In this document: positions 13,293-53,113 of the stretch, one piece after another | Layout of the letters: every line of letters begins with the position of its first letter | How positions within the stretch are numbered: the stretch's first letter is position 1 | IMG/VR virus record: IMGVR_UViG_2162886007_000107 | Location: 124,001-188,000 of that record | Length of the DNA stretch: 64,000 nt | Strand: one strand, 5' to 3' | Translations under genes and position numbers: made by a program | Notes under the pieces: generated by a model | Databases searched by the model: none | The model's input: the letters and a program-made list of their open reading frames with translations, nothing else | What the model was told of the DNA's origin: nothing

Positions 13293-13325
13293 TTTAACTT
13301 CTGGGGGTTCTCAAGTCTATATTAC
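13293..13325 (+). promoter_or_regulatory. phiKZ-type early promoter
   Basis: TATATTAC at 13318-13325; full element TTTAACTTCT-N12-GTCTATATTAC is repeated at 51618. Confidence 0.7.
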
Positions 13326-41862: not shown

Positions 41863-43815
41863 ATGCAGCACGAGGCCGATATCTTTAAGCGGATGGAAGA
41901 CCTGAGTAATCAAATTTCCAAACACGCTTATTTGTACTTTTACAAAGACAAATCTATCATCTCCGACTTTGCTTACGACGAGCTGACCAAGCAATTTAAA
42001 CAACTGTGCAAGGATCACCCTAAACTAGCCGAACTGTTTGAGATCAGAAACAAACCAGTCCCTATTCGGGAACCTGGCGGTCAAGGTCTGAAGGTTATTA
42101 CCTTTAATGAGCCGATGCTTAGTCTGGATAAGGTTTATACCCTAGACGAAATCGAACGGTTTAAAGCCAAGTTCCCTAAAGACACAGCTTTCTTTTACGA
42201 GCTGAAGTTGGACGGTTTGGCGCTGGAGATTGAATACAAGGACTGGAAGCTGTTTCGGATCACAACTCGTGGTAGTGGGCTGAGTGGTGAGGACGTTACT
42301 CACTCGCTGCCTTTGTTTGATAATTTACTGATGGACCTTCCACCTCATTTCCCACCTGACTTTAAAGTGCGCGGTGAAGCGATAGTTAGTTACGAGAACT
42401 ATCACATCTATAACGAAGCAGCCGCTAAGCCAGCCAAGAGTCCGCGTAATGCGGTTAGTGGTTGGGTACGAGCCCTTAAGAAGAACCAAAATAAGCAAGC
42501 CTTTGGTTTAGTTTACTTCTACGTTTACTGGGTAAATGATTCCCTTGGGTGCAAAACCTACGAGGATCTGCGTAATCAGTTGTTTAACGCTGGGTTCAAT
42601 GCTCCTCCACAGGCTTCCATGGAAGCGATCCGTGATGAAGTCGATAGTCAAGATTGGCCTGCTGACGGTATTGTCATTAAGGTCAATGACCTGGAGCTGC
42701 GTAAAGCAACAGGAGAAAACAATCAGTTCCCATTGTGGGCTACTGCTTGGAAGTATCCAAACAAAGAACTGACCACTCCTATCGAAGACGTTGAATGGAA
42801 TACAGGTATGACTGGCCGGGTAACACCAGTTGGTATTTATAACCCGGTTCATTTCGGTAGCGTGGAATGTAGTCGTGCTTCTATCGACAACTACTTCCAG
42901 TTCATGAAGCTCGGTCTACGCAAAGGCAGCGTCGTTACTGTTAGTAGAAACGGCGATGTTATCCCGCGTATTGTTGAGATGGTTGAGGAGGGAGATGGCG
43001 AACACTTCCAGGCTCCAGAGACCTGCCCAAGCTGCGGTAGTCTCTTGGAAGTACGTAAGGGCAAAACCAGTGCTGATCTCATCTGTAACAACGTTGTAGA
43101 GTGTCCTGAGCAGCTCATGCGTCGTTGTGAAGAGATGGTTAGCAAGAAGTGCTTGGACATTGAAGGTTTAGGCCCTGTGAAGATTGCAGAGCTTATTGAA
43201 GGTGGCCATGTTACTCGTACCGCCGACATTTTTAAGACGATGATTCCGATGCCTCCTAAAGCTTTAATCCAACTGCTTAGTTGTCAGGAGCAGCCGGCGC
43301 ACATCATCATCAAGGCATTGGGTCTACCAAAGATCGACTTGACTCGTGCTAAGAAGTTGGCAAGCGCTTGGCCTAGAGATACCAGTTTGATCGAGTTCCT
43401 CAAGGACACTGATCAACTCATGGCTATTGACGGTATTTCTGCGGGGATTGCTTTCCCTATTGCCAAGATCATGAAGAACGCGGACTTTGTAGCCAATGCT
43501 GAGGCTATCCTTGCTGTCCTTAAAGAAGATAGTTCCAAGGATAAGCAAGAGTACTGGATCAAAGGTTGCATCACAGGTTCTCTGGGGCAGTCTAGAGACG
43601 AACTAAAGGAGGTGTTTGGTGAACACGGCATTGAGCTAGTAGAAGACCTGACTAAGGACTGTCAGTTCCTTATTGTGGGCGAGCGTCCGGGGTTAAGTAA
43701 GAAATTAAAAGCAACTGAGCTGGGCATCGCTATAGTCGAAGGATCTAACGCGACCAGTATCGAAAAACTCATTGAAGAAATCAAATCAAGGGTACCGGGT
43801 AATGTCAACTCCTAA
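41863..43815 (+). CDS. ligA: NAD-dependent DNA ligase
   Basis: ISDFAYD (domain Ia), ELKLDG (adenylated K), RGEA, DGIVIK, AWKY, TG.VTP, CPSC..C..C zinc finger, C-terminal BRCT. Confidence 0.95.
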   Translation: MQHEADIFKRMEDLSNQISKHAYLYFYKDKSIISDFAYDELTKQFKQLCKDHPKLAELFEIRNKPVPIREPGGQGLKVITFNEPMLSLDKVYTLDEIERFKAKFPKDTAFFYELKLDGLALEIEYKDWKLFRITTRGSGLSGEDVTHSLPLFDNLLMDLPPHFPPDFKVRGEAIVSYENYHIYNEAAAKPAKSPRNAVSGWVRALKKNQNKQAFGLVYFYVYWVNDSLGCKTYEDLRNQLFNAGFNAPPQASMEAIRDEVDSQDWPADGIVIKVNDLELRKATGENNQFPLWATAWKYPNKELTTPIEDVEWNTGMTGRVTPVGIYNPVHFGSVECSRASIDNYFQFMKLGLRKGSVVTVSRNGDVIPRIVEMVEEGDGEHFQAPETCPSCGSLLEVRKGKTSADLICNNVVECPEQLMRRCEEMVSKKCLDIEGLGPVKIAELIEGGHVTRTADIFKTMIPMPPKALIQLLSCQEQPAHIIIKALGLPKIDLTRAKKLASAWPRDTSLIEFLKDTDQLMAIDGISAGIAFPIAKIMKNADFVANAEAILAVLKEDSSKDKQEYWIKGCITGSLGQSRDELKEVFGEHGIELVEDLTKDCQFLIVGERPGLSKKLKATELGIAIVEGSNATSIEKLIEEIKSRVPGNVNS

Positions 43816-45386: not shown

Positions 45387-45938
45387 GTGTCAAAGCCGTG
45401 GAAACACTTTAAGAAAGCTCCAAAGGTACCAGTTTTACAGGATCCCCATATCGTCTATACGGACGGTAGTTCTTTGGGGAATCCTGGTCCAGGTGGGTAT
45501 GGTGTAGTTGCCATCCACGGAACCACAGTAGTGAAGATGTCTAAAGGTTACAAGCACACTACTAATAACCGCATGGAGATCATGGCGGTCATTGCAGCGC
45601 TTGAAGAATTTGGACCGAACCAGCAATTTATCATTGCTACTGATTCGCAGTATGTGATTAACGGTTCTACTATCTGGATGAAAGGTTGGGTTCGTAATGA
45701 CTGGATCGGTACCATGTCAGGTGAGCCTATTAAAAATGGTGATCTATGGAAGATCATGAACGAGTTGCTCAAAGTCAACAAAGTCGTGTTCTTCAAAGTG
45801 AAGGGTCACTCAGGCGATCCTTTGAACGACGCTGCGGATGCACTTGCAGTTGCAGCAGCCAAAGACAACCCGGAAACTATCGATGAAGGGTACATTGCAT
45901 CGCTTTCTCATAGTGAGGACACCAATGGAAGAGTTTAG
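45387..45938 (+). CDS. rnhA: ribonuclease HI
   Basis: VYTDGSSLGNPGPGGYG, TTNNRMEIMA, TDSQYVING, KNGDLW, VKGHSG...N..ADALA. Confidence 0.95.
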   Translation: MSKPWKHFKKAPKVPVLQDPHIVYTDGSSLGNPGPGGYGVVAIHGTTVVKMSKGYKHTTNNRMEIMAVIAALEEFGPNQQFIIATDSQYVINGSTIWMKGWVRNDWIGTMSGEPIKNGDLWKIMNELLKVNKVVFFKVKGHSGDPLNDAADALAVAAAKDNPETIDEGYIASLSHSEDTNGRV

Positions 45939-47805: not shown

Positions 47806-48831
47806 ATGGAAGACAGATTCCAACATGATGTAGTGTGTCTCTACCACAAGAACTGCCTGGATGGTTTAGCGGCAGGTTGGGTGGTCTGGAGTTTCTTCGG
47901 TGGCTTCCTTGACATGGTTGCCATCCAGTATGGCGATGATTACGAAGCAATGTTTGGTGAGGGCTTCCAGAGCCTCGTGGGTAAAAAGGTCATCTGCGTT
48001 GATTTTGCATTTGATCTGAAAACCACCAAGTTTCTGAGTGAGATCTGTGATCTGTTGGTACTGGATCATCATGATACCGCTCAGCGTGATTTGGGCGAGA
48101 TCGCGTACAAGTCCTTTGTACAAGCTCGTAATGAGTTCACCCCACGTGGCTTAATGTACAACATTCCTAATGAGCCAAACATGACGGTGGTTGTTGATAA
48201 CCGTCATTCCGGTGCTCGTCTGGCCTGGGAATGGTTTTACGCCACTGCCCTTGTTCCTACACCGATCAAGTTTGTTGAAGACTACGATCTGTGGAAGTTC
48301 CACTATGCCAATACCAAGGCTTTTGTTGCAGCGGCTTTCAGCGGTGAAATGACCCCTGAACAGTTCAACAAGTATGTGTCCAATGATCCTGATGAACAAA
48401 GCAAGATCATTGACCGCATGGTCTTGGAAGGCAACGCCATCCAGCGCCATATCGACAAGACTGTTAAAGGTCTGTCGAGAAGCGCACGGCGCTTTAAGCT
48501 GGATGGCTACGACGTACCTATTGTCAATGGCAATTCCGTGTTCCGTAACGAACTGGGTGCGATCTTGGCAGTAGATGAGCCGTTCTCTGTGACGTACACC
48601 GATCACCGTGACGGACGGCAGTATTCACTGCGTAGCAAAAAGGATGGTTTGCATGTAGGTGACATTGCCAAGCGCTTCGGTGGCGGTGGTCATGCTAACA
48701 GTGCGGCTTTCCGTATCCACATGGATGATGACCAATTCCATAACTCTCATCTGGAACTCTCTTCTACTCGGCACGTCAAGAACGGCAACGAGTGGGTCGA
48801 AGTTCCACGTTATGCAAAGAAGGATAGTTAA
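47806..48831 (+). CDS. DHH-DHHA1 family phosphoesterase
   Basis: YHKNCLDG (motif I), VICVDF (II), LVLDHH (III), YSLRS and GGGGHANSAAF (DHHA1). Confidence 0.9.
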   Translation: MEDRFQHDVVCLYHKNCLDGLAAGWVVWSFFGGFLDMVAIQYGDDYEAMFGEGFQSLVGKKVICVDFAFDLKTTKFLSEICDLLVLDHHDTAQRDLGEIAYKSFVQARNEFTPRGLMYNIPNEPNMTVVVDNRHSGARLAWEWFYATALVPTPIKFVEDYDLWKFHYANTKAFVAAAFSGEMTPEQFNKYVSNDPDEQSKIIDRMVLEGNAIQRHIDKTVKGLSRSARRFKLDGYDVPIVNGNSVFRNELGAILAVDEPFSVTYTDHRDGRQYSLRSKKDGLHVGDIAKRFGGGGHANSAAFRIHMDDDQFHNSHLELSSTRHVKNGNEWVEVPRYAKKDS

Positions 48832-48833
48832 TA

Positions 48834-49298
48834 GTGAGAATGCGCTCCCCACGGTTAAATAAATCCTTGGAACTCGGGCGTAGTCGTATGCGAGAAGCCT
48901 TTGTTACGGAGGAAATGCAACTCCTTCGTACCAAGGCTTTTGAAAATCTGGAGACCCTCGGGTATTTTGACAAAGCCAACAAAGAGCTTCAAGGCTTTGA
49001 AGTAAGTATCCGTAATGAAATGTATGGGTTTGATAACCCTACTGCTCCAGAGTTCATCAAGATTCGCGTTACTACTACCCAAGAACCATACCCGATGTTT
49101 GTAATCACGCGCGACGTGAAAATTACTGGTAAACGCTTTGATCCAAACAAAGCACGCTTCCGGTTTTGCGCGGGTACCAAGAAGTGGTCGATCTTCAGCG
49201 AAAGCGCTGGGTATCCACTCCATGTGTCTGTTTACAAGAAAGTATTGGAAACTCTCGTTGCCCACGATAAGGCACCTGTCAGGAGACCTGTTAAATGA
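48834..49298 (+). CDS. hypothetical protein
   Basis: 154-aa ORF in a coupled operon. Confidence 0.7.
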   Translation: MRMRSPRLNKSLELGRSRMREAFVTEEMQLLRTKAFENLETLGYFDKANKELQGFEVSIRNEMYGFDNPTAPEFIKIRVTTTQEPYPMFVITRDVKITGKRFDPNKARFRFCAGTKKWSIFSESAGYPLHVSVYKKVLETLVAHDKAPVRRPVK

Positions 49299-49672
49299 CT
49301 TGCAATAACTGCGGCAATTGCAAATGTGAGCCACAACCAACCCAGTACGAACTCGCCATGAACAAAGCTGGCGACGTCCTGGAGTACGCTCTGGATCATG
49401 TGGACCATCCACAGTTCGATCGTATCAAGTACCCTAACCGTGTTTCGGTTGGTGGCTACTTCGCCGGTATCCACGAAGACGAGTTCTTCGGTCCCCGCAT
49501 TTATCTGTGGGAAAGCGACAAGCCTGATGAAGATCCGATCGTGTACATCAACCGTACTGCGATGGGTCTGCACAACGTGGATGCTACTCCTCCAATGATC
49601 ACCTCCAAGGAAATGAATGATCTGATGGCGCAGTTCAAAGACCTGCTCAACAAACACTTCTTCCAGGGGTGA
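49295..49672 (+). CDS. hypothetical protein with N-terminal CNNCGNCKC
   Basis: 125 aa, ATGA overlap. Confidence 0.75.
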   Translation: MTCNNCGNCKCEPQPTQYELAMNKAGDVLEYALDHVDHPQFDRIKYPNRVSVGGYFAGIHEDEFFGPRIYLWESDKPDEDPIVYINRTAMGLHNVDATPPMITSKEMNDLMAQFKDLLNKHFFQG

Positions 49673-49676
49673 TATC

Positions 49677-50396
49677 ATGAATCAGACTTCTCAAAACCTT
49701 TTTGATCGGATTGTTAACGTACTCGAATATGCCTGGGTAGCTGCTCCAGGTATGGTACAAAAGACTTCCGTTACTAGTGCTACTTTTGTTTTCAAGAAAG
49801 ATGGGGAATGGACGATCCACTATTACGAGTACCCGCTTGTTATTGGCGCGCCCTTGTTCAGCATTTCCAAGAACGGCCTTCAAGCTGACTTGAATACGAC
49901 TGACGCCATTGTCGAAAGTAAGCTTCGTAATTTGCTACATCTTCTGCGCACCGAATACGGTAACCCGTTACAAGCTAAAATGGTGACGATCGATAATTTC
50001 GAAGCCCGAGGTATGGTATTACCACCGGGGGTTGAAAGTTCTATCCAACCAAACGAAATTCTCAGTGCGGTAAGTGAGCTGTATCACCGGATGTTGGAAT
50101 CCCTTCGTGTTGCCAATGACTACTATGGCTTCACTGGTCGACTGGCTACTGTCAACGGAGTAATTGTAACTACTGGACAGAATCGTACTTATGGTAAGGA
50201 GTTCACTTTTGAATTTCCTGCCAAAGACGGGGTTCGATCATCCACGGTTAACCTCTATTCCACTGGGTTCACGTTCTACTCCGGTGAACAAAGAAACATA
50301 CCGGATTGTGAAGCCATGTTGGTTAACCTCCGTGTTATCAGTAAGGCGGTAATCGAATCCCTCACTCCATCCGGCATCAGCCATTTGGCTAGCTAA
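49677..50396 (+). CDS. hypothetical protein
   Basis: 239 aa. Confidence 0.75.
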   Translation: MNQTSQNLFDRIVNVLEYAWVAAPGMVQKTSVTSATFVFKKDGEWTIHYYEYPLVIGAPLFSISKNGLQADLNTTDAIVESKLRNLLHLLRTEYGNPLQAKMVTIDNFEARGMVLPPGVESSIQPNEILSAVSELYHRMLESLRVANDYYGFTGRLATVNGVIVTTGQNRTYGKEFTFEFPAKDGVRSSTVNLYSTGFTFYSGEQRNIPDCEAMLVNLRVISKAVIESLTPSGISHLAS

Positions 50397-50405
50397 GGAA
50401 TAAAC

Positions 50406-51089
50406 ATGAGTTCCATCCGTGACTGTATGACTATAGCTGCTGATGTGGTATCGGTCTACAAGAAAATTCTGGATGTCAGTATAGGGGACGTACCTATTGG
50501 TTGCGTTTACGTAGCTGATGGTATCTACGCTTCCGTGCTGACCGATACCGAGCCGTATCGTGTTGCGTTCTATGACTTTACTGTTTCTCACGAACCGTTC
50601 TTTATTGTAGGTGAAAAGACCTACGATCCTCGTGCAGATGGTAAGGATGGGGTTTACTTCTATCCTTTTGTTGTAGAAGCTCTGTATGCGTTCCTACGTC
50701 TGTTCGTTTCACGCGATCAGGTCAGGCCAGTACAGAACCCTGACATCTGGGATTGGGATCGTTCTCCACGAGTGTTGGTTGCATTCCACCACATGTGGCG
50801 TCTCATGAAGAAGAGTTATCCGAAAAGCCAGGAGATTACCACGCGCGCTGATTACTTCGTTAAAGGCGAGTCAAGCATGTGTGTCTGGATATGGAACGAC
50901 GAACTTCAAACGGTAACGGCCTTTTGGGGCGGTATTGATTTGAATGGTCAAACCCGCGGCTTGGGTATTACCTATGACGGTAAAGCTCTAAGCAATGTCC
51001 GTGCAGACTGGGGAATCCACCTTGACGGTAATGACACTTTGTTCTGTAAGGCTATTGCACATATCCCGTTCAATCCAGCGTTGCAGTAA
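50406..51089 (+). CDS. hypothetical protein
   Basis: 227 aa, AAGGA RBS. Confidence 0.75.
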   Translation: MSSIRDCMTIAADVVSVYKKILDVSIGDVPIGCVYVADGIYASVLTDTEPYRVAFYDFTVSHEPFFIVGEKTYDPRADGKDGVYFYPFVVEALYAFLRLFVSRDQVRPVQNPDIWDWDRSPRVLVAFHHMWRLMKKSYPKSQEITTRADYFVKGESSMCVWIWNDELQTVTAFWGGIDLNGQTRGLGITYDGKALSNVRADWGIHLDGNDTLFCKAIAHIPFNPALQ

Positions 51090-51105
51090 TTTGTAAATCG
51101 TATAG

Positions 51106-51152
51106 CCTACCAGGGGTAATTCCCTGGTAGGTACACCCTTCTTTATTTTTTT
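51106..51152 (+). terminator. intrinsic terminator
   Basis: CCTACCAGGG-GTAATT-CCCTGGTAGG, T-rich tail. Confidence 0.75.
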
Positions 51153-51167
51153 GTTCAAGGCCTCTTT

Positions 51168-51608
51168 ATGGATCGTGATTACAGCTACATACAGGTGTCT
51201 CTAAGAGACGATCTCGTACAGGACGTATATAGCCAGCTCATTGAGATTGGCGTTGCTCCTAACGACAAGTACGACCTCCACACAACCATCATGTTTGATG
51301 AGCGTGATCTGGTTGCTCCTTTCTGTGAATTGGAACCTAACAAGGAATTCGTTGCCAAGATCAACGGTATGGGTAAATTGGGGGATGCTTACGTATTCCA
51401 CCTTTATAGTCCGCAACTGCACGAGGCTTTTACCAAGCTTACTGAAGCCGGCTACGAGCATTCGTACGGTACTCCGTTGTGGCATCTGTCTTTGGCATAC
51501 AAGCTGGATGATTTCCAATACCTATCCATTGACCATGCATTTGCTCATTGGATGGGTCGTGAGATCGTGTTGCGCAATATGGCGTTTGGTTTTAAGAAGA
51601 ATAAGTGA
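51168..51608 (+). CDS. acb1: 2H phosphodiesterase, T4 gp57B / anti-CBASS Acb1-like
   Basis: Two HxT/S motifs: LHTTIMF (H38) and HSYGTPLWHLSLAY (H106), paralleling T4 57B IHSTICY and HDFDDYTPHITLSY as recalled; 146 aa. Confidence 0.7.
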   Translation: MDRDYSYIQVSLRDDLVQDVYSQLIEIGVAPNDKYDLHTTIMFDERDLVAPFCELEPNKEFVAKINGMGKLGDAYVFHLYSPQLHEAFTKLTEAGYEHSYGTPLWHLSLAYKLDDFQYLSIDHAFAHWMGREIVLRNMAFGFKKNK

Positions 51609-51617
51609 GGCTGGAAA

Positions 51618-51650
51618 TTTAACTTCTAGGATTAGACACGTCTATATTAC
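51618..51650 (+). promoter_or_regulatory. phiKZ-type early promoter
   Basis: TTTAACTTCT-N12-GTCTATATTAC, same boxes and spacing as 13293. Confidence 0.75.
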
Positions 51651-51717
51651 TCCCGTGTATGAATGACAAAGGTTTTTAATAATTGCCTTGTCTCAACTGA
51701 TAGCCGCGGGAGGCTCC

Positions 51718-52833
51718 ATGTTTCAAATAGACACGATCGTAGAAGCGGTAACCAAGCACTCCAAGGTCGAGGACGATCTGGCTGCGGCTATCGTTGGGTT
51801 CTATCTGCTGGACATCAAGTTCATTGCAGTAAACCAACGCAAGAAAGTTCTGGATGCGCTGAAAGAACGTTTGGGTAAAACCTGGACTATCAGCAAGATC
51901 CGTGGTGTCAATCCAAAGATCTTGGGTGATCTGCAATTGCCATCGAAAGAACAACCGGTAACTGGCGATAACGTCAGCCCGACTCACAAAGTCGAGGTCA
52001 CCCCAAATGCCGCTCTGCAATACGAGTGGCCAGAAGGGCAAGGTCCGACAGCCGTCCAACACCAAACCAACACCAACACCATTTCGCACTCCGAGGAAAC
52101 CAGCATGACCAACACCGCCATCACTCTGACCTCCGCCCCTGAAGTTATCCTGGCGCACGTCAAAGAAAACAAGAAGGCCATCAAGGCCCAGGTCGAAGAT
52201 TTCAAAGAGCTGGTCGAATCCGACAAGAAGCGCAGCAAGGCCGTCCACAAGTGGATCGAAGCCGACGAAGATCGTGAAGAAGCCTGGAAAGCTTTCAACG
52301 CTCACCTCGACGGCGCGATCAAGGACAAAGACACCCTGCTGATCACCTTCGTTCGTCTGAGCGAAAAGCCGAAGAAAGAATTCCGCAGCCTGGAAAAAGC
52401 CATGAAGTCCAAAGCGAAAGAAATCGCTGAAGCCTCGGGTGAAGGTCGCAAAGACGTCGCAACCAGCTTCGGCCTGGGCGCAATCGTCGGTGGTCTCGGC
52501 AACATGTTCATGAACGGTTTCACGCCTGGTGCGGCAGTGGGTACCGCAGTGGCCGCTGGCGGCTGCTACTACCTCGGCACCAAGATCGACGAGCAAGGCG
52601 ACGACGACGGCATCGACAAGCGCGCTGGCGCCTTCCTGCTGGGCGGTGGTCTGGGCTACGGCGGTGCAGCTCTCGGCCGCATGGCTGAAGTGCATGTCAT
52701 CGAACAATACGCCGAATGGTTCGGCGGCAAGGAAGACGGCGAAGTTTCCGACAGCGTGTCGGTAGTCATCCACAACAACAACCTTCCGGCCGATAGCACT
52801 CAGAACTCTCTGCGTGCTCTGGGTCTGATCTAA
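51718..52833 (+). CDS. early coiled-coil / glycine-zipper membrane protein; possible internal start at 52105
   Basis: GGAGG RBS + ATG 51718; second GAGGA + ATG 52105; two Gly-rich hydrophobic helices near the C-terminus. Confidence 0.75.
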   Translation: MFQIDTIVEAVTKHSKVEDDLAAAIVGFYLLDIKFIAVNQRKKVLDALKERLGKTWTISKIRGVNPKILGDLQLPSKEQPVTGDNVSPTHKVEVTPNAALQYEWPEGQGPTAVQHQTNTNTISHSEETSMTNTAITLTSAPEVILAHVKENKKAIKAQVEDFKELVESDKKRSKAVHKWIEADEDREEAWKAFNAHLDGAIKDKDTLLITFVRLSEKPKKEFRSLEKAMKSKAKEIAEASGEGRKDVATSFGLGAIVGGLGNMFMNGFTPGAAVGTAVAAGGCYYLGTKIDEQGDDDGIDKRAGAFLLGGGLGYGGAALGRMAEVHVIEQYAEWFGGKEDGEVSDSVSVVIHNNNLPADSTQNSLRALGLI

Positions 52834-52840
52834 CCAGGTA

Positions 52841-52887
52841 TAGCAGAGTACCCCGTGGGGTACTCTGCTAGCACCCTTTTCTTTTTT
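52841..52887 (+). terminator. intrinsic terminator
   Basis: TAGCAGAGTACCC-CGTG-GGGTACTCTGCTA then T-rich tail. Confidence 0.8.
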
Positions 52888-52903
52888 GCTGCGAGGTCTA
52901 TTT

Positions 52904-53113
52904 ATGCAACATGTCGTTTTTGCAGTTCTCACTGTTCTCGGTAGTGCAGCACCGCAAGCGCCACAAGTTACAACCTTCAGAACGGATGACTGTAAGGCAG
53001 GCATGGAACAAGTAGTTCGTAGCTACAGCCTGCAACAGTTTGTTCGTTCTTGGTCCGTTAAAAGCATGACTGCCGATAACGGTAAACTTCATTTGAAAGT
53101 CACTTGTAATTAG
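52904..53113 (+). CDS. small exported protein
   Basis: GAGG RBS; hydrophobic N-terminus; two Cys. Confidence 0.65.
   Translation: MQHVVFAVLTVLGSAAPQAPQVTTFRTDDCKAGMEQVVRSYSLQQFVRSWSVKSMTADNGKLHLKVTCN

What the first reader, a model, noticed from the sequence alone, without database searches (positions are those of the whole stretch)
51168..51608. Acb1-like 2H phosphodiesterase in a nucleus-type jumbo phage
Seen: H38-T-T and H106-L-S motifs with T4 gp57B-like spacing and flanks (LHTTIMF; HSYGTPLWHLSLAY). Established: T4 Acb1 is a 2H phosphoesterase that cleaves cyclic di- and trinucleotides to block CBASS. Nucleus-forming phages evade DNA-targeting systems but remain exposed to signalling-based immunity (CBASS, type III CRISPR). 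Inference: a divergent anti-CBASS or ring nuclease. The second motif is HxS rather than HxT and the C-terminal lid differs, so substrate range may differ. The gene sits alone between a terminator and an early promoter with a weak RBS, so its timing is unclear.
Basis: partly seen in the sequence, partly recalled or inferred. Interest (0 to 1): 0.7.

Follow-up and report, generated by a model that had tools for sequence, protein, structure and literature searches.

The report
Lidless Acb1-family phosphodiesterase in a chimallivirus
The gene encodes a small, catalytically intact enzyme of the Acb1 family, which phages use to destroy bacterial cyclic-nucleotide alarm signals, in a nucleus-forming jumbo phage; it is a correct but largely expected identification, and this minimal version lacks several substrate-gripping parts, so its exact target is untested.

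Summary
Its AlphaFold model (pLDDT 88) is closest to the two solved phage Acb1-type enzymes (Z 14.8 and 13.3). E. coli LigT scores Z of about 10, and no LigT-type Pfam model matches.

The genome is a complete 236-kb chimallivirus of the EL/RisingSun lineage, with chimallin, the divergent PolB and split RNA polymerase. The gene is the last in a conserved block: NAD-ligase, RNase H, DHH phosphoesterase, 2H. It lies between a recurrent hairpin/T-run terminator and a recurrent TTAACTT-N17-TATATTAC early-type promoter.

Compared with T4 Acb1, the catalytic tetrad, Y12 and F107 are kept. W74 is Leu, E141 is Gly, and the protein ends before the W147 lid. There is also no N-terminal lid. It is therefore a minimal, lidless subtype.

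Relatives are already auto-named Acb1 in UniProt and listed in a 2025 catalogue of phage 2H phosphodiesterases. I found no report that any member of this clade has been assayed. It is most likely a cyclic-oligonucleotide signal phosphodiesterase, at about 0.55 confidence. It is a new member of a known kind, of moderate interest.

The parts
51168..51608 (+). 146-aa 2H phosphoesterase of the Pfam Acb1 family. Catalytic H38-x-T40 and H106-x-S108. Retained ligand-site residues Y7 (T4 Y12) and H98-S99-Y100 (T4 H105-D-F107). No N- or C-terminal lid.
51105..51153 (+). Terminator-like element directly upstream: 12-bp hairpin (51105-51132) then CTTTATTTTTTTG. It is one of 6 copies of this T-run motif in the genome, all on the + strand. 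The same arrangement lies upstream of the orthologue in EL and two metagenomic relatives.
51157..51160 (+). Weak Shine-Dalgarno-like AAGG, 7 nt before the ATG. AAGG/AAGGA is kept at the same place in relatives.
51619..51650 (+). Promoter for the next gene: TTAACT-N18-TATATTAC. It is one of 12 TATATTAC sites in the genome, all on the + strand, most of which share the extended form. It matches the predicted phiKZ / 201phi2-1 promoter consensus. The 2H gene has no such site of its own.
   Evidence: RNA contigs start at 51690
47806..48831 (+). DHH/DHHA1 phosphoesterase (DHHD and GGGGH motifs, 341 aa, NrnA-like size). It is the syntenic upstream neighbour of the 2H gene in EL and in 9 of 10 related loci. 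A functional link is not shown.

Best explanation
The ORF encodes a catalytically competent, minimal (lidless) member of the Acb1 family of viral 2H phosphodiesterases, in an EL/RisingSun-lineage chimallivirus. SHOWN: family membership by HMM and fold; intact H-x-T / H-x-S tetrad; retention of two Acb1 base-stacking positions; vertical conservation in this phage lineage; position as the last gene of a transcription unit. INFERRED: like T4 and FBB1 Acb1 it would act in the host cytoplasm. There H38 and H106 would carry out metal-independent acid-base cleavage of a 3'-5' phosphodiester in cyclic di- or trinucleotide immune signals (3'3'-cGAMP, cUA, cAAA/cA3). The reaction would go through a 2',3'-cyclic phosphate to a linear 3'-phosphate product, silencing CBASS effectors and cA3-activated effectors of type III CRISPR. 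Nucleotide-signalling and RNA-guided systems of this kind still reach nucleus-forming phages. Because L71 replaces W74, G141 replaces E141 and no lid exists, its substrate range and rate probably differ from T4 Acb1. Expression is probably low and by read-through of the upstream terminator. It does not come from an early TATATTAC promoter.
For: Pfam Acb1 32.6 bits against GA 27, and the only family reported at E<=10. All 116 aligned representatives of the 281 found by the profile hit PF23474. The profile against PDB sequences finds only Acb1-type chains: 9q2g E 8.6e-5, 7t26 E 0.88. The model has pLDDT 88.3 and pTM 0.82. Foldseek: 9q2g/9q2y about 5e-7, 7t26 8.5e-6, LigT 1.6e-3. VIA Z: 14.8 and 13.3 for the phage enzymes at rmsd 2.7-2.8, against about 10 at rmsd above 4 for LigT. 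The catalytic residues are invariant. Y7=Y12 and H98/Y100=H105/F107. The Acb1 mechanism and its defining residues come from PMC9117128. PDE-9, the closest solved structure, cleaves 3'3'-cGAMP and still does so slowly without its lid. The genome has a chimallin homologue. Nucleus-forming phages remain exposed to type III CRISPR/NucC, and hosts use nucleotide second-messenger defences including CBASS (PMC13282480). The complete genome has no RNA ligase or RtcB to pair with an RNA-healing enzyme. phiKZ, which uses the sponge Tad1, lacks the gene.
Against: No activity data were found for this clade. Three of the six described Acb1 ligand contacts are missing: W74 to Leu, E141 to Gly, W147 lid absent. 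T4 Acb1 without its lid fails to trigger Panoptes cell death in vivo, which the authors read as the lid being needed for catalysis, and two structural groups of viral 2H PDEs cut none of 18 messengers. The gene sits in a replication/repair block (NAD-ligase, RNase H, DHH), not in an obvious anti-defence island. It appears near-universal in the EL, RisingSun, Miami, pTD1 and OBP lineages, which is more typical of a housekeeping gene. Single-sequence similarity to solved Acb1 chains is weak (E 0.59). The tree places the clade apart from T4 and PDE-9, with weak deep nodes.
Confidence: 0.55

Rival explanations
1. It is a 2H phosphodiesterase for a different small messenger than the classical Acb1 set. 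Candidates are larger cyclic oligoadenylates (cA4/cA6), 2'-5'-linked species, 2'3'-c-di-AMP, or an unknown signal. The open, lidless, tryptophan-less pocket would set this different specificity.
For: Loss of W74, E141 and W147. In T4 and FBB1 the closed pocket is what excludes rings larger than three bases. Viral 2H PDE groups differ sharply in substrate, the core governs specificity, and some groups cut none of 18 messengers. The clade is separate from T4 and PDE-9 in the tree.
Against: There is no positive evidence for any particular alternative substrate. Y7 and the H98-S-Y100 block are kept as in Acb1. The closest solved structure is a 3'3'-cGAMP-cleaving enzyme.
Confidence: 0.2
2. It is an RNA-end or nucleotide 2',3'-cyclic phosphodiesterase (LigT/ThpR-like housekeeping enzyme). 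It would act in phage nucleic-acid metabolism together with the neighbouring RNase H and DHH phosphoesterase, not in immune evasion.
For: PHROG 755 and many GenBank records label it 'RNA ligase' or 'RNA 2',3'-cyclic phosphodiesterase'. Synteny with NAD-ligase, RNase H and DHH is conserved. Conservation is broad and apparently vertical across several chimallivirus lineages. 31 of 116 relatives also hit 2_5_RNA_ligase2. Acb1's base-specific contacts are lost.
Against: No LigT-type Pfam model matches this protein even at E<=10. LigT-type structures score lower (Z about 10, rmsd above 4) and are about 30 residues longer. No RNA ligase, RtcB or Rnl1 is present to complete a repair pathway. The 'RNA ligase' labels are transferred annotation, not tests.
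Confidence: 0.15
3. It is a virion-packaged protein delivered with the DNA. It would be either an injected enzyme that acts before any phage transcription or a structural component that has lost enzymatic importance.
For: The homologue CBB_118 was found in purified CBB particles by ESI-MS/MS, with 7 unique peptides and 60% coverage. The review says phiKZ Tad1 is injected. The gene has no early promoter, which would suit a late-made, packaged protein.
Against: CBB_118 is only 28% identical over about 110 aligned residues, and its phage gave no chimallin match to this query (not conclusive). RisingSun gp120 is not among the rows of the lysate proteome table that I could see, and its 'structural' label may be transferred annotation, which I did not trace. 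The catalytic residues are invariant, so enzymatic function is selected. Packaging would add to the main explanation rather than exclude it.
Confidence: 0.05

Closest known systems
Burkholderia phage BCSR5 '2H PDE-9' (PDB 9Q2G/9Q2Y; Doherty et al., bioRxiv 10.1101/2025.08.21.671373)
   Same: It is the best sequence-profile hit (E 8.6e-5) and the best structural hit (Z 14.8, rmsd 2.7 over 142 residues). It has the same compact 2H core, comes from a jumbo phage, and cleaves 3'3'-cGAMP.
   Different: Identity is only 18-20%. PDE-9 has a 15-residue N-terminal lid and a Trp at the T4 W74 position. The window protein has 4 residues before strand 1 and Leu at that position. PDE-9's second motif is HLT.
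T4 / Erwinia phage FBB1 Acb1 (PDB 7T26/7T27; Hobbs et al. 2022, PMC9117128)
   Same: They share the 2H fold, the H-x-T...H-x-T/S tetrad with nearly the same spacing, Y12 and F107 equivalents, and about 150 aa length. Both match Pfam PF23474.
   Different: Identity is about 15%. W74 is Leu, E141 is Gly, and the protein ends before W147, so there is no C-terminal lid. It has a clade-specific W128-x-G-R segment that T4 lacks. The genomic setting is a replication block, not next to ipI.
Pseudomonas phage EL gp126, Erwinia phage RisingSun gp120 and other chimallivirus orthologues
   Same: They belong to the same subfamily: 37-38% and 34% identity, and TM 0.92 to the RisingSun model. Synteny is shared. 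They are auto-named 'Anti-CBASS protein Acb1' in UniProt or 'RNA ligase' in RefSeq.
   Different: No activity data were found for any of them. EL keeps the Glu corresponding to T4 E138, where the window's clade has Met.
LigT/ThpR 2'-5' RNA ligase-like 2',3'-cyclic phosphodiesterases (e.g. E. coli LigT 5LDM, 4QAK)
   Same: The 2H superfamily fold and the two H-x-T/S motifs.
   Different: Structural scores are lower (Z about 10, rmsd 4.2-4.6). These enzymes are about 175-185 aa. There is no Pfam LigT_PEase or 2_5_RNA_ligase2 match for this protein, and no hit in the profile search of PDB sequences.

Membership tests
Acb1 (viral anti-CBASS 2H phosphodiesterase; Pfam PF23474) | Match to the family HMM above its curated gathering score | tested here: met
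   32.6 bits against 27, E 8e-8. The genome scan gives 31.8 bits. All 116 relatives match.
Acb1 | Compact 2H fold, closest to solved Acb1 structures | tested here: met
   Model pLDDT 88. 9q2g Z 14.8 and 7t26 Z 13.3 rank above all other 2H structures.
Acb1 | Active-site HxT/HxT tetrad (T4 H44, T46, H113, T115) | tested here: met
   H38, T40, H106 and S108, with Ser for the second Thr. HxS is the majority form in the family.
Acb1 | Four aromatic base-stacking residues (Y12, W74, F107, W147) | tested here: not met
   Y7 and Y100 are present. The W74 position is an invariant Leu (L71). W147 is absent because the chain ends at the preceding position.
Acb1 | E141 contact to adenine N6 | tested here: not met
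   The aligned position is G141, invariant in the clade. This rests on sequence alignment only.
Acb1 | Flexible terminal lid closing over the ligand (C-terminal in T4/FBB1, N-terminal in PDE-9) | tested here: not met
   There are 4 residues before strand 1, and the last strand runs to residue 143 of 146.
Acb1 | [quoted passage not shown] | not testable with these tools
   This needs biochemistry and phage genetics. The ligand co-folding job was not run by the tool.
LigT/ThpR RNA 2',3'-cyclic phosphodiesterase | Match to LigT_PEase (PF02834) or 2_5_RNA_ligase2 (PF13563) | tested here: not met
   Neither is reported for this protein at E<=10.
LigT/ThpR RNA 2',3'-cyclic phosphodiesterase | Closest structural neighbours are LigT-type enzymes | tested here: not met
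   LigT-type chains reach Z 9.7-10.2 at rmsd above 4, below Acb1-type, plant CPDase and poxvirus cGAMP PDE.
Chimalliviridae (nucleus-forming jumbo phages), for the genome | Chimallin (nuclear shell protein) homologue, plus phiKZ-type divergent PolB and split multisubunit RNAP | tested here: met
   G000:72685-74769 is 46% identical to the EL 'nuclear shell protein' and 43% to RisingSun. PF20286 scores 792 bits, and there are Rpb1/Rpb2 fragments. Direct BLAST to phiKZ gp54 failed.

The most novel reading that the evidence does not exclude
The EL-lineage enzyme is a naturally lidless, open-pocket Acb1 relative. Its substrate range would extend to rings that T4 Acb1 cannot take (for example cA4 or cA6 of type III CRISPR, which is known to act against nucleus-forming phages). 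It would work as a pair with the conserved neighbouring NrnA-like DHH/DHHA1 phosphoesterase: the 2H enzyme opens the ring and the DHH enzyme degrades the linear products. That would be a two-enzyme signal-erasing module specific to this branch of Chimalliviridae.
Probability: 0.12. Interest if true: 0.7.

Novelty: new member of a known kind. Interest (0 to 1): 0.4.

Why it matters
Nucleus-forming phages shelter their DNA from restriction and DNA-targeting CRISPR. RNA-guided type III CRISPR still reaches them through their exported transcripts, and hosts widely use nucleotide second messengers (type III CRISPR, CBASS, Thoeris). A 2026 review states that Tad1 is the only anti-defence protein described so far in jumbo phages.

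An Acb1-family enzyme is conserved across the EL, RisingSun, Miami, pTD1 and OBP lineages and absent from phiKZ. If active, it would be an enzymatic counterpart to the phiKZ sponge. It would also be a natural test of how much of the Acb1 pocket (lid, W74, E141) is needed for activity and specificity.

The value is incremental. The family, its mechanism and the diversity of phage 2H phosphodiesterases are already published, and relatives already carry the Acb1 name in databases.

Tried and rejected

(2) Finding chimallin with phiKZ gp54 by BLASTP or a genome search failed. It was resolved by searching the candidate ORF against phage records.

(3) TATATTAC is not enriched within the window alone: 2 sites against 0.9 expected. 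Only the whole-genome count (12 on the + strand, 0 on the - strand) and the shared extended context show it to be a real motif.

(4) Single-sequence phmmer against PDB was nearly empty (E 0.59). The profile was needed.

(5) RNA-seq contigs: none cover the 2H gene, while neighbours are covered. Contigs cannot show absence and depths are low, so this is only weak support for low expression.

(6) An RNA-repair pathway was considered. No RNA ligase (PF09414), RtcB or T4 Rnl1 was found in the complete genome. The Rnl1 control rang nowhere, so that one result is uninformative.

(7) Antisense and overlapping ORFs at 51185-51666 have no support and lie inside the conserved gene. I treat them as spurious.

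(8) The family tree has weak deep nodes (64 of 121 inner forks below 80% support and drawn unresolved). I draw no conclusion from it about the origin of the clade relative to T4 Acb1.

(9) The supplements of Hobbs 2022 do not name EL, RisingSun or OBP homologues. The nine homologues tested there could not be identified from the text.

Full report
**The observation**

window:51168-51608(+) is an ATG-started ORF of 146 codons.

The T4 Acb1 protein was read from the T4 record (L014, 152 aa). It has H44-S-T and H113-I-T, so the His-His spacing is 69 residues against 68 here. A profile alignment pairs the two motif blocks without gaps, and MAFFT agrees (A3).

The overlapping ORFs on both strands are short, unsupported and lie inside a conserved gene. 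I treat them as spurious.

**What the protein is**

- Pfam reports one family at E<=10: Acb1 (PF23474), 32.6 bits against a gathering score of 27.
- PHROGs gives phrog_755, labelled 'RNA ligase' (E 1e-12). This label is carried by many GenBank records of homologues.
- Thirteen near relatives from metagenomes (58-93% identity) all carry a precomputed PF23474 hit.
- In an alignment of these plus EL gp126 (A1), the following are invariant: Y5, Y7, H38, H98, S99, H106, S108, Y111, W128, G130 and G141.
- A profile of A1 searched against all PDB sequences finds only Acb1-type chains. These are 9Q2G/9Q2Y (E 8.6e-5 and 2.6e-3) and 7T26 (E 0.88). No LigT or ThpR chain appears.
- The same profile searched against 1.84 billion representatives finds 281 proteins at E<=1e-3. 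I aligned 114 of them, together with the window protein and T4 Acb1 (116 sequences in all), and every one matches PF23474. Thirty-one also match 2_5_RNA_ligase2.

**Structure**

The AlphaFold2 model built on A1 has mean pLDDT 88.3 and pTM 0.82, with a beta-alpha-beta-beta-beta-alpha-beta-alpha-beta order.

| Target | Foldseek E | VIA-align Z | rmsd |
|---|---|---|---|
| Burkholderia phage BCSR5 PDE (9Q2G/9Q2Y) | 4e-7 to 9e-7 (TM 0.70-0.74) | 14.8 | 2.7 A over 142 residues |
| FBB1 Acb1 (7T26) | 8.5e-6 | 13.3 | 2.8 A |
| Arabidopsis CPDase | 2.5e-4 | 12.1 | 4.0 A |
| Penguinpox cGAMP PDE | 3.0e-3 | 11.1 | 3.0 A |
| E. coli LigT | 1.6e-3 | about 10 | above 4 A |

In the viral model library the best match is the RisingSun orthologue (TM 0.92). 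UniProt already names it, and several other jumbo-phage homologues, 'Anti-CBASS protein Acb1'.

**How it differs from characterised Acb1**

Hobbs et al. (PMC9117128) define these features:

- the HxT/HxT tetrad (H44, T46, H113, T115);
- four stacking aromatics (Y12, W74, F107, W147);
- E141 contacting adenine N6;
- a C-terminal lid (residues 145-152).

They also report a closed pocket that excludes cA4.

Alignment A3 and the family-wide table give these correspondences:

| T4 Acb1 | Window protein |
|---|---|
| Y12 | Y7 |
| H44 / T46 | H38 / T40 |
| H105 / F107 | H98 / Y100 |
| H113 / T115 | H106 / S108 |
| W74 | L71 (invariant Leu) |
| E138 / Y139 / E141 | M138 / A139 / G141 |
| W147 | none; the chain ends one residue before it |

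There are only four residues before strand 1. So there is also no N-terminal lid of the kind seen in PDE-9 (sequence).

The clade has a conserved W128-x-G-R segment that T4 lacks. Its role is unknown.

HxS is the majority second motif in the family. HxT together with a long Trp-bearing C-terminus marks the T4 subgroup.

Doherty et al. (bioRxiv 10.1101/2025.08.21.671373) report three relevant results:

- the core, not the lid, sets specificity;
- PDE-9 without its lid still cleaves 3'3'-cGAMP slowly, whereas lidless T4 Acb1 fails to trigger Panoptes in vivo, which the authors read as the lid being needed for catalysis;
- two structural groups of viral 2H PDEs cut none of 18 messengers.

Their list of 75 phage 2H PDEs includes pTD1 gp030, AH04_67 and EJP2_129. 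The pTD1 and EJP2 records are among my tblastn hits, and AH04 carries a chimallin homologue. None of the three carries a 2H PDE number in that table, i.e. none is marked as selected for purification.

**The genome**

The window is bases 124001-188000 of a 236,430-bp viral record rated 100% complete. The record encodes:

- a phiKZ-type divergent family-B polymerase (PF20286, 792 bits);
- fragments of a split multisubunit RNA polymerase;
- at 72685-74769, a 694-aa protein 46% identical to the EL protein annotated 'nuclear shell protein' in EL-like phage records (43% to RisingSun, 22-32% to others), which some related phage records annotate as 'nuclear shell protein' or chimallin.

It is therefore a chimallivirus of the EL/RisingSun lineage. 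Runs holding the sequence are rhizosphere, soil and plant metagenomes.

The homologue list for the 2H protein and the list for chimallin show the same record counts for Vibrio (13), Pseudomonas (12), Klebsiella (7), Photobacterium, Edwardsiella, Serratia and Kosakonia (2 each). Identities fall in broadly the same order in both lists. This points to long vertical retention in these lineages.

phiKZ has no match to PF23474 or to the 116-sequence profile. According to the 2026 review it carries the sponge Tad1, described there as the only anti-defence protein described in jumbo phages.

**Context and expression**

The upstream genes are:

- NAD-dependent DNA ligase (41863-43815);
- a 520-aa unknown;
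- RNase H (45387-45938);
- small ORFs;
- a DHH/DHHA1 phosphoesterase (47806-48831);
- four ORFs with no family match (48834-51089).

The 2H gene follows.

EL has ligase gp122, gp123, RNase H gp124, DHH gp125 and 2H gp126. Nine of ten related IMG/VR loci keep DHH upstream of 2H, sometimes directly adjacent. The DHH homologue is not found in the RisingSun, Miami or pTD1 lineages.

Directly upstream of the ATG is a 12-bp hairpin followed by CTTTATTTTTTTG. The T-run motif occurs six times in the genome, always on the + strand. The same hairpin and T-run arrangement precedes the orthologue in EL and two other relatives.

Directly downstream of the stop is TTAACT-N18-TATATTAC. TATATTAC occurs 12 times on the + strand and never on the - strand, and most sites share the extended form TTAACTT-N17/18-cTATATTAC-N4-GTG. 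The same motif follows the 2H gene in five relatives. It matches the promoter consensus tabulated for phiKZ and 201phi2-1 in PMC7058600. That phiKZ uses this motif for early genes is my recollection of Ceyssens et al. 2014, not checked here.

The nearest upstream copy is 38 kb away, at window 13318. The 2H gene therefore has no early-type promoter and only 15 nt between the T-run and its ATG. It must be expressed by read-through, or from a promoter type I cannot recognise.

In a plant-metagenome RNA library, contigs cover the upstream ORFs at depth about 2 and the downstream gene from 51690 at depth 9-14. None lies on the 2H gene. This is weak evidence, because contigs show presence and not absence.

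**Interpretation**

Family membership, intact catalytic residues and the Acb1-type fold are shown. The substrate is inferred.

I put about 0.55 on cleavage of cyclic di- or trinucleotide immune signals by the Acb1 mechanism. I put about 0.2 on a different messenger substrate, given the open lidless pocket. I put about 0.15 on a LigT-like RNA or nucleotide 2',3'-cyclic phosphodiesterase role. The replication-block context and broad conservation suggest that role. The HMM and fold ranking argue against it, as does the absence of any RNA ligase or RtcB in the complete genome.

One lead I did not expect: the distant homologue CBB_118 was detected in purified CBB virions with 60% coverage. In that phage it sits between NAMPT and a Sir2-like gene. 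Packaging of this enzyme class is therefore possible, but it is untested for chimalliviruses.

**Verdict**

The item is a new, minimal member of a known and already catalogued family, in a lineage where I found no report of it being assayed. I rate the interest as moderate.

Noticed in passing
window 47806-48831 (+): An intact DHH/DHHA1 phosphoesterase (DHHD and GGGGH motifs, 341 aa, NrnA-like size; weak PDB matches to 'DHH family' 9R7O and SH1221). It keeps its place just upstream of the 2H gene in EL and 9 of 10 related loci. Stand-alone DHH/DHHA1 enzymes are known, from my own knowledge, to degrade c-di-AMP, cGAMP and short linear oligos, so it could be a second signal-degrading enzyme or simply a nanoRNase.
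   Followed up: partly
genome-wide; window 13318-13325 and 51619-51650: A strand-specific promoter family, TTAACTT-N17/18-cTATATTAC-N4-GTG. There are 12 TATATTAC sites on the + strand and none on the - strand. It matches the phiKZ / 201phi2-1 consensus and is conserved downstream of the 2H gene in 5 relatives.
   Followed up: partly
window 51105-51153 and five other genome sites (G000: 42070, 64548, 117566, 132030, 235736): A recurrent T-run motif, TTTATTTTTTTG, found only on the + strand. At the window site it follows a 12-bp hairpin and looks like a terminator. The site at G000:64548 lies about 60 nt before a TATATTAC promoter. I did not check the other sites for hairpins.
   Followed up: partly
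window 51718-52833 (+): The downstream 371-aa ORF matches no Pfam or PHROG family and has a Gly/Ala-rich hydrophobic C-terminal part. It has a GGAGG ribosome-binding site and is the best-covered stretch in two RNA libraries (depth 9-14 in X6).
   Followed up: no
window 48834-51089 (+): Four ORFs (154, 125, 239 and 227 aa) with no family match sit between DHH and the 2H gene. Relatives carry different subsets (the 154- and 125-aa ORFs in some; the 239-aa ORF only here). This is a variable islet inside an otherwise syntenic block.
   Followed up: partly
L027 (Pectobacterium phage CBB, CBB_115-CBB_120): The CBB homologue CBB_118 is a mass-spectrometry-confirmed virion protein. It lies between a nicotinamide phosphoribosyltransferase and a Sir2-like gene, an NAD-metabolism neighbourhood that looks like counter-defence.
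   Followed up: partly
phage records (OBP, pEt-SU, N1M2, Kc263, PS1, ACP1, AVP1, Yubaba, AhC3_1): In these chimallivirus lineages the 2H gene lies only 3-6 kb from the chimallin gene. In EL, RisingSun, Miami and this genome the two are about 100 kb apart.
   Followed up: no
window 51676-53004 (-): A 442-aa antisense ORF fully overlaps the expressed 371-aa gene. It is probably a compositional artefact and was not examined.
   Followed up: no
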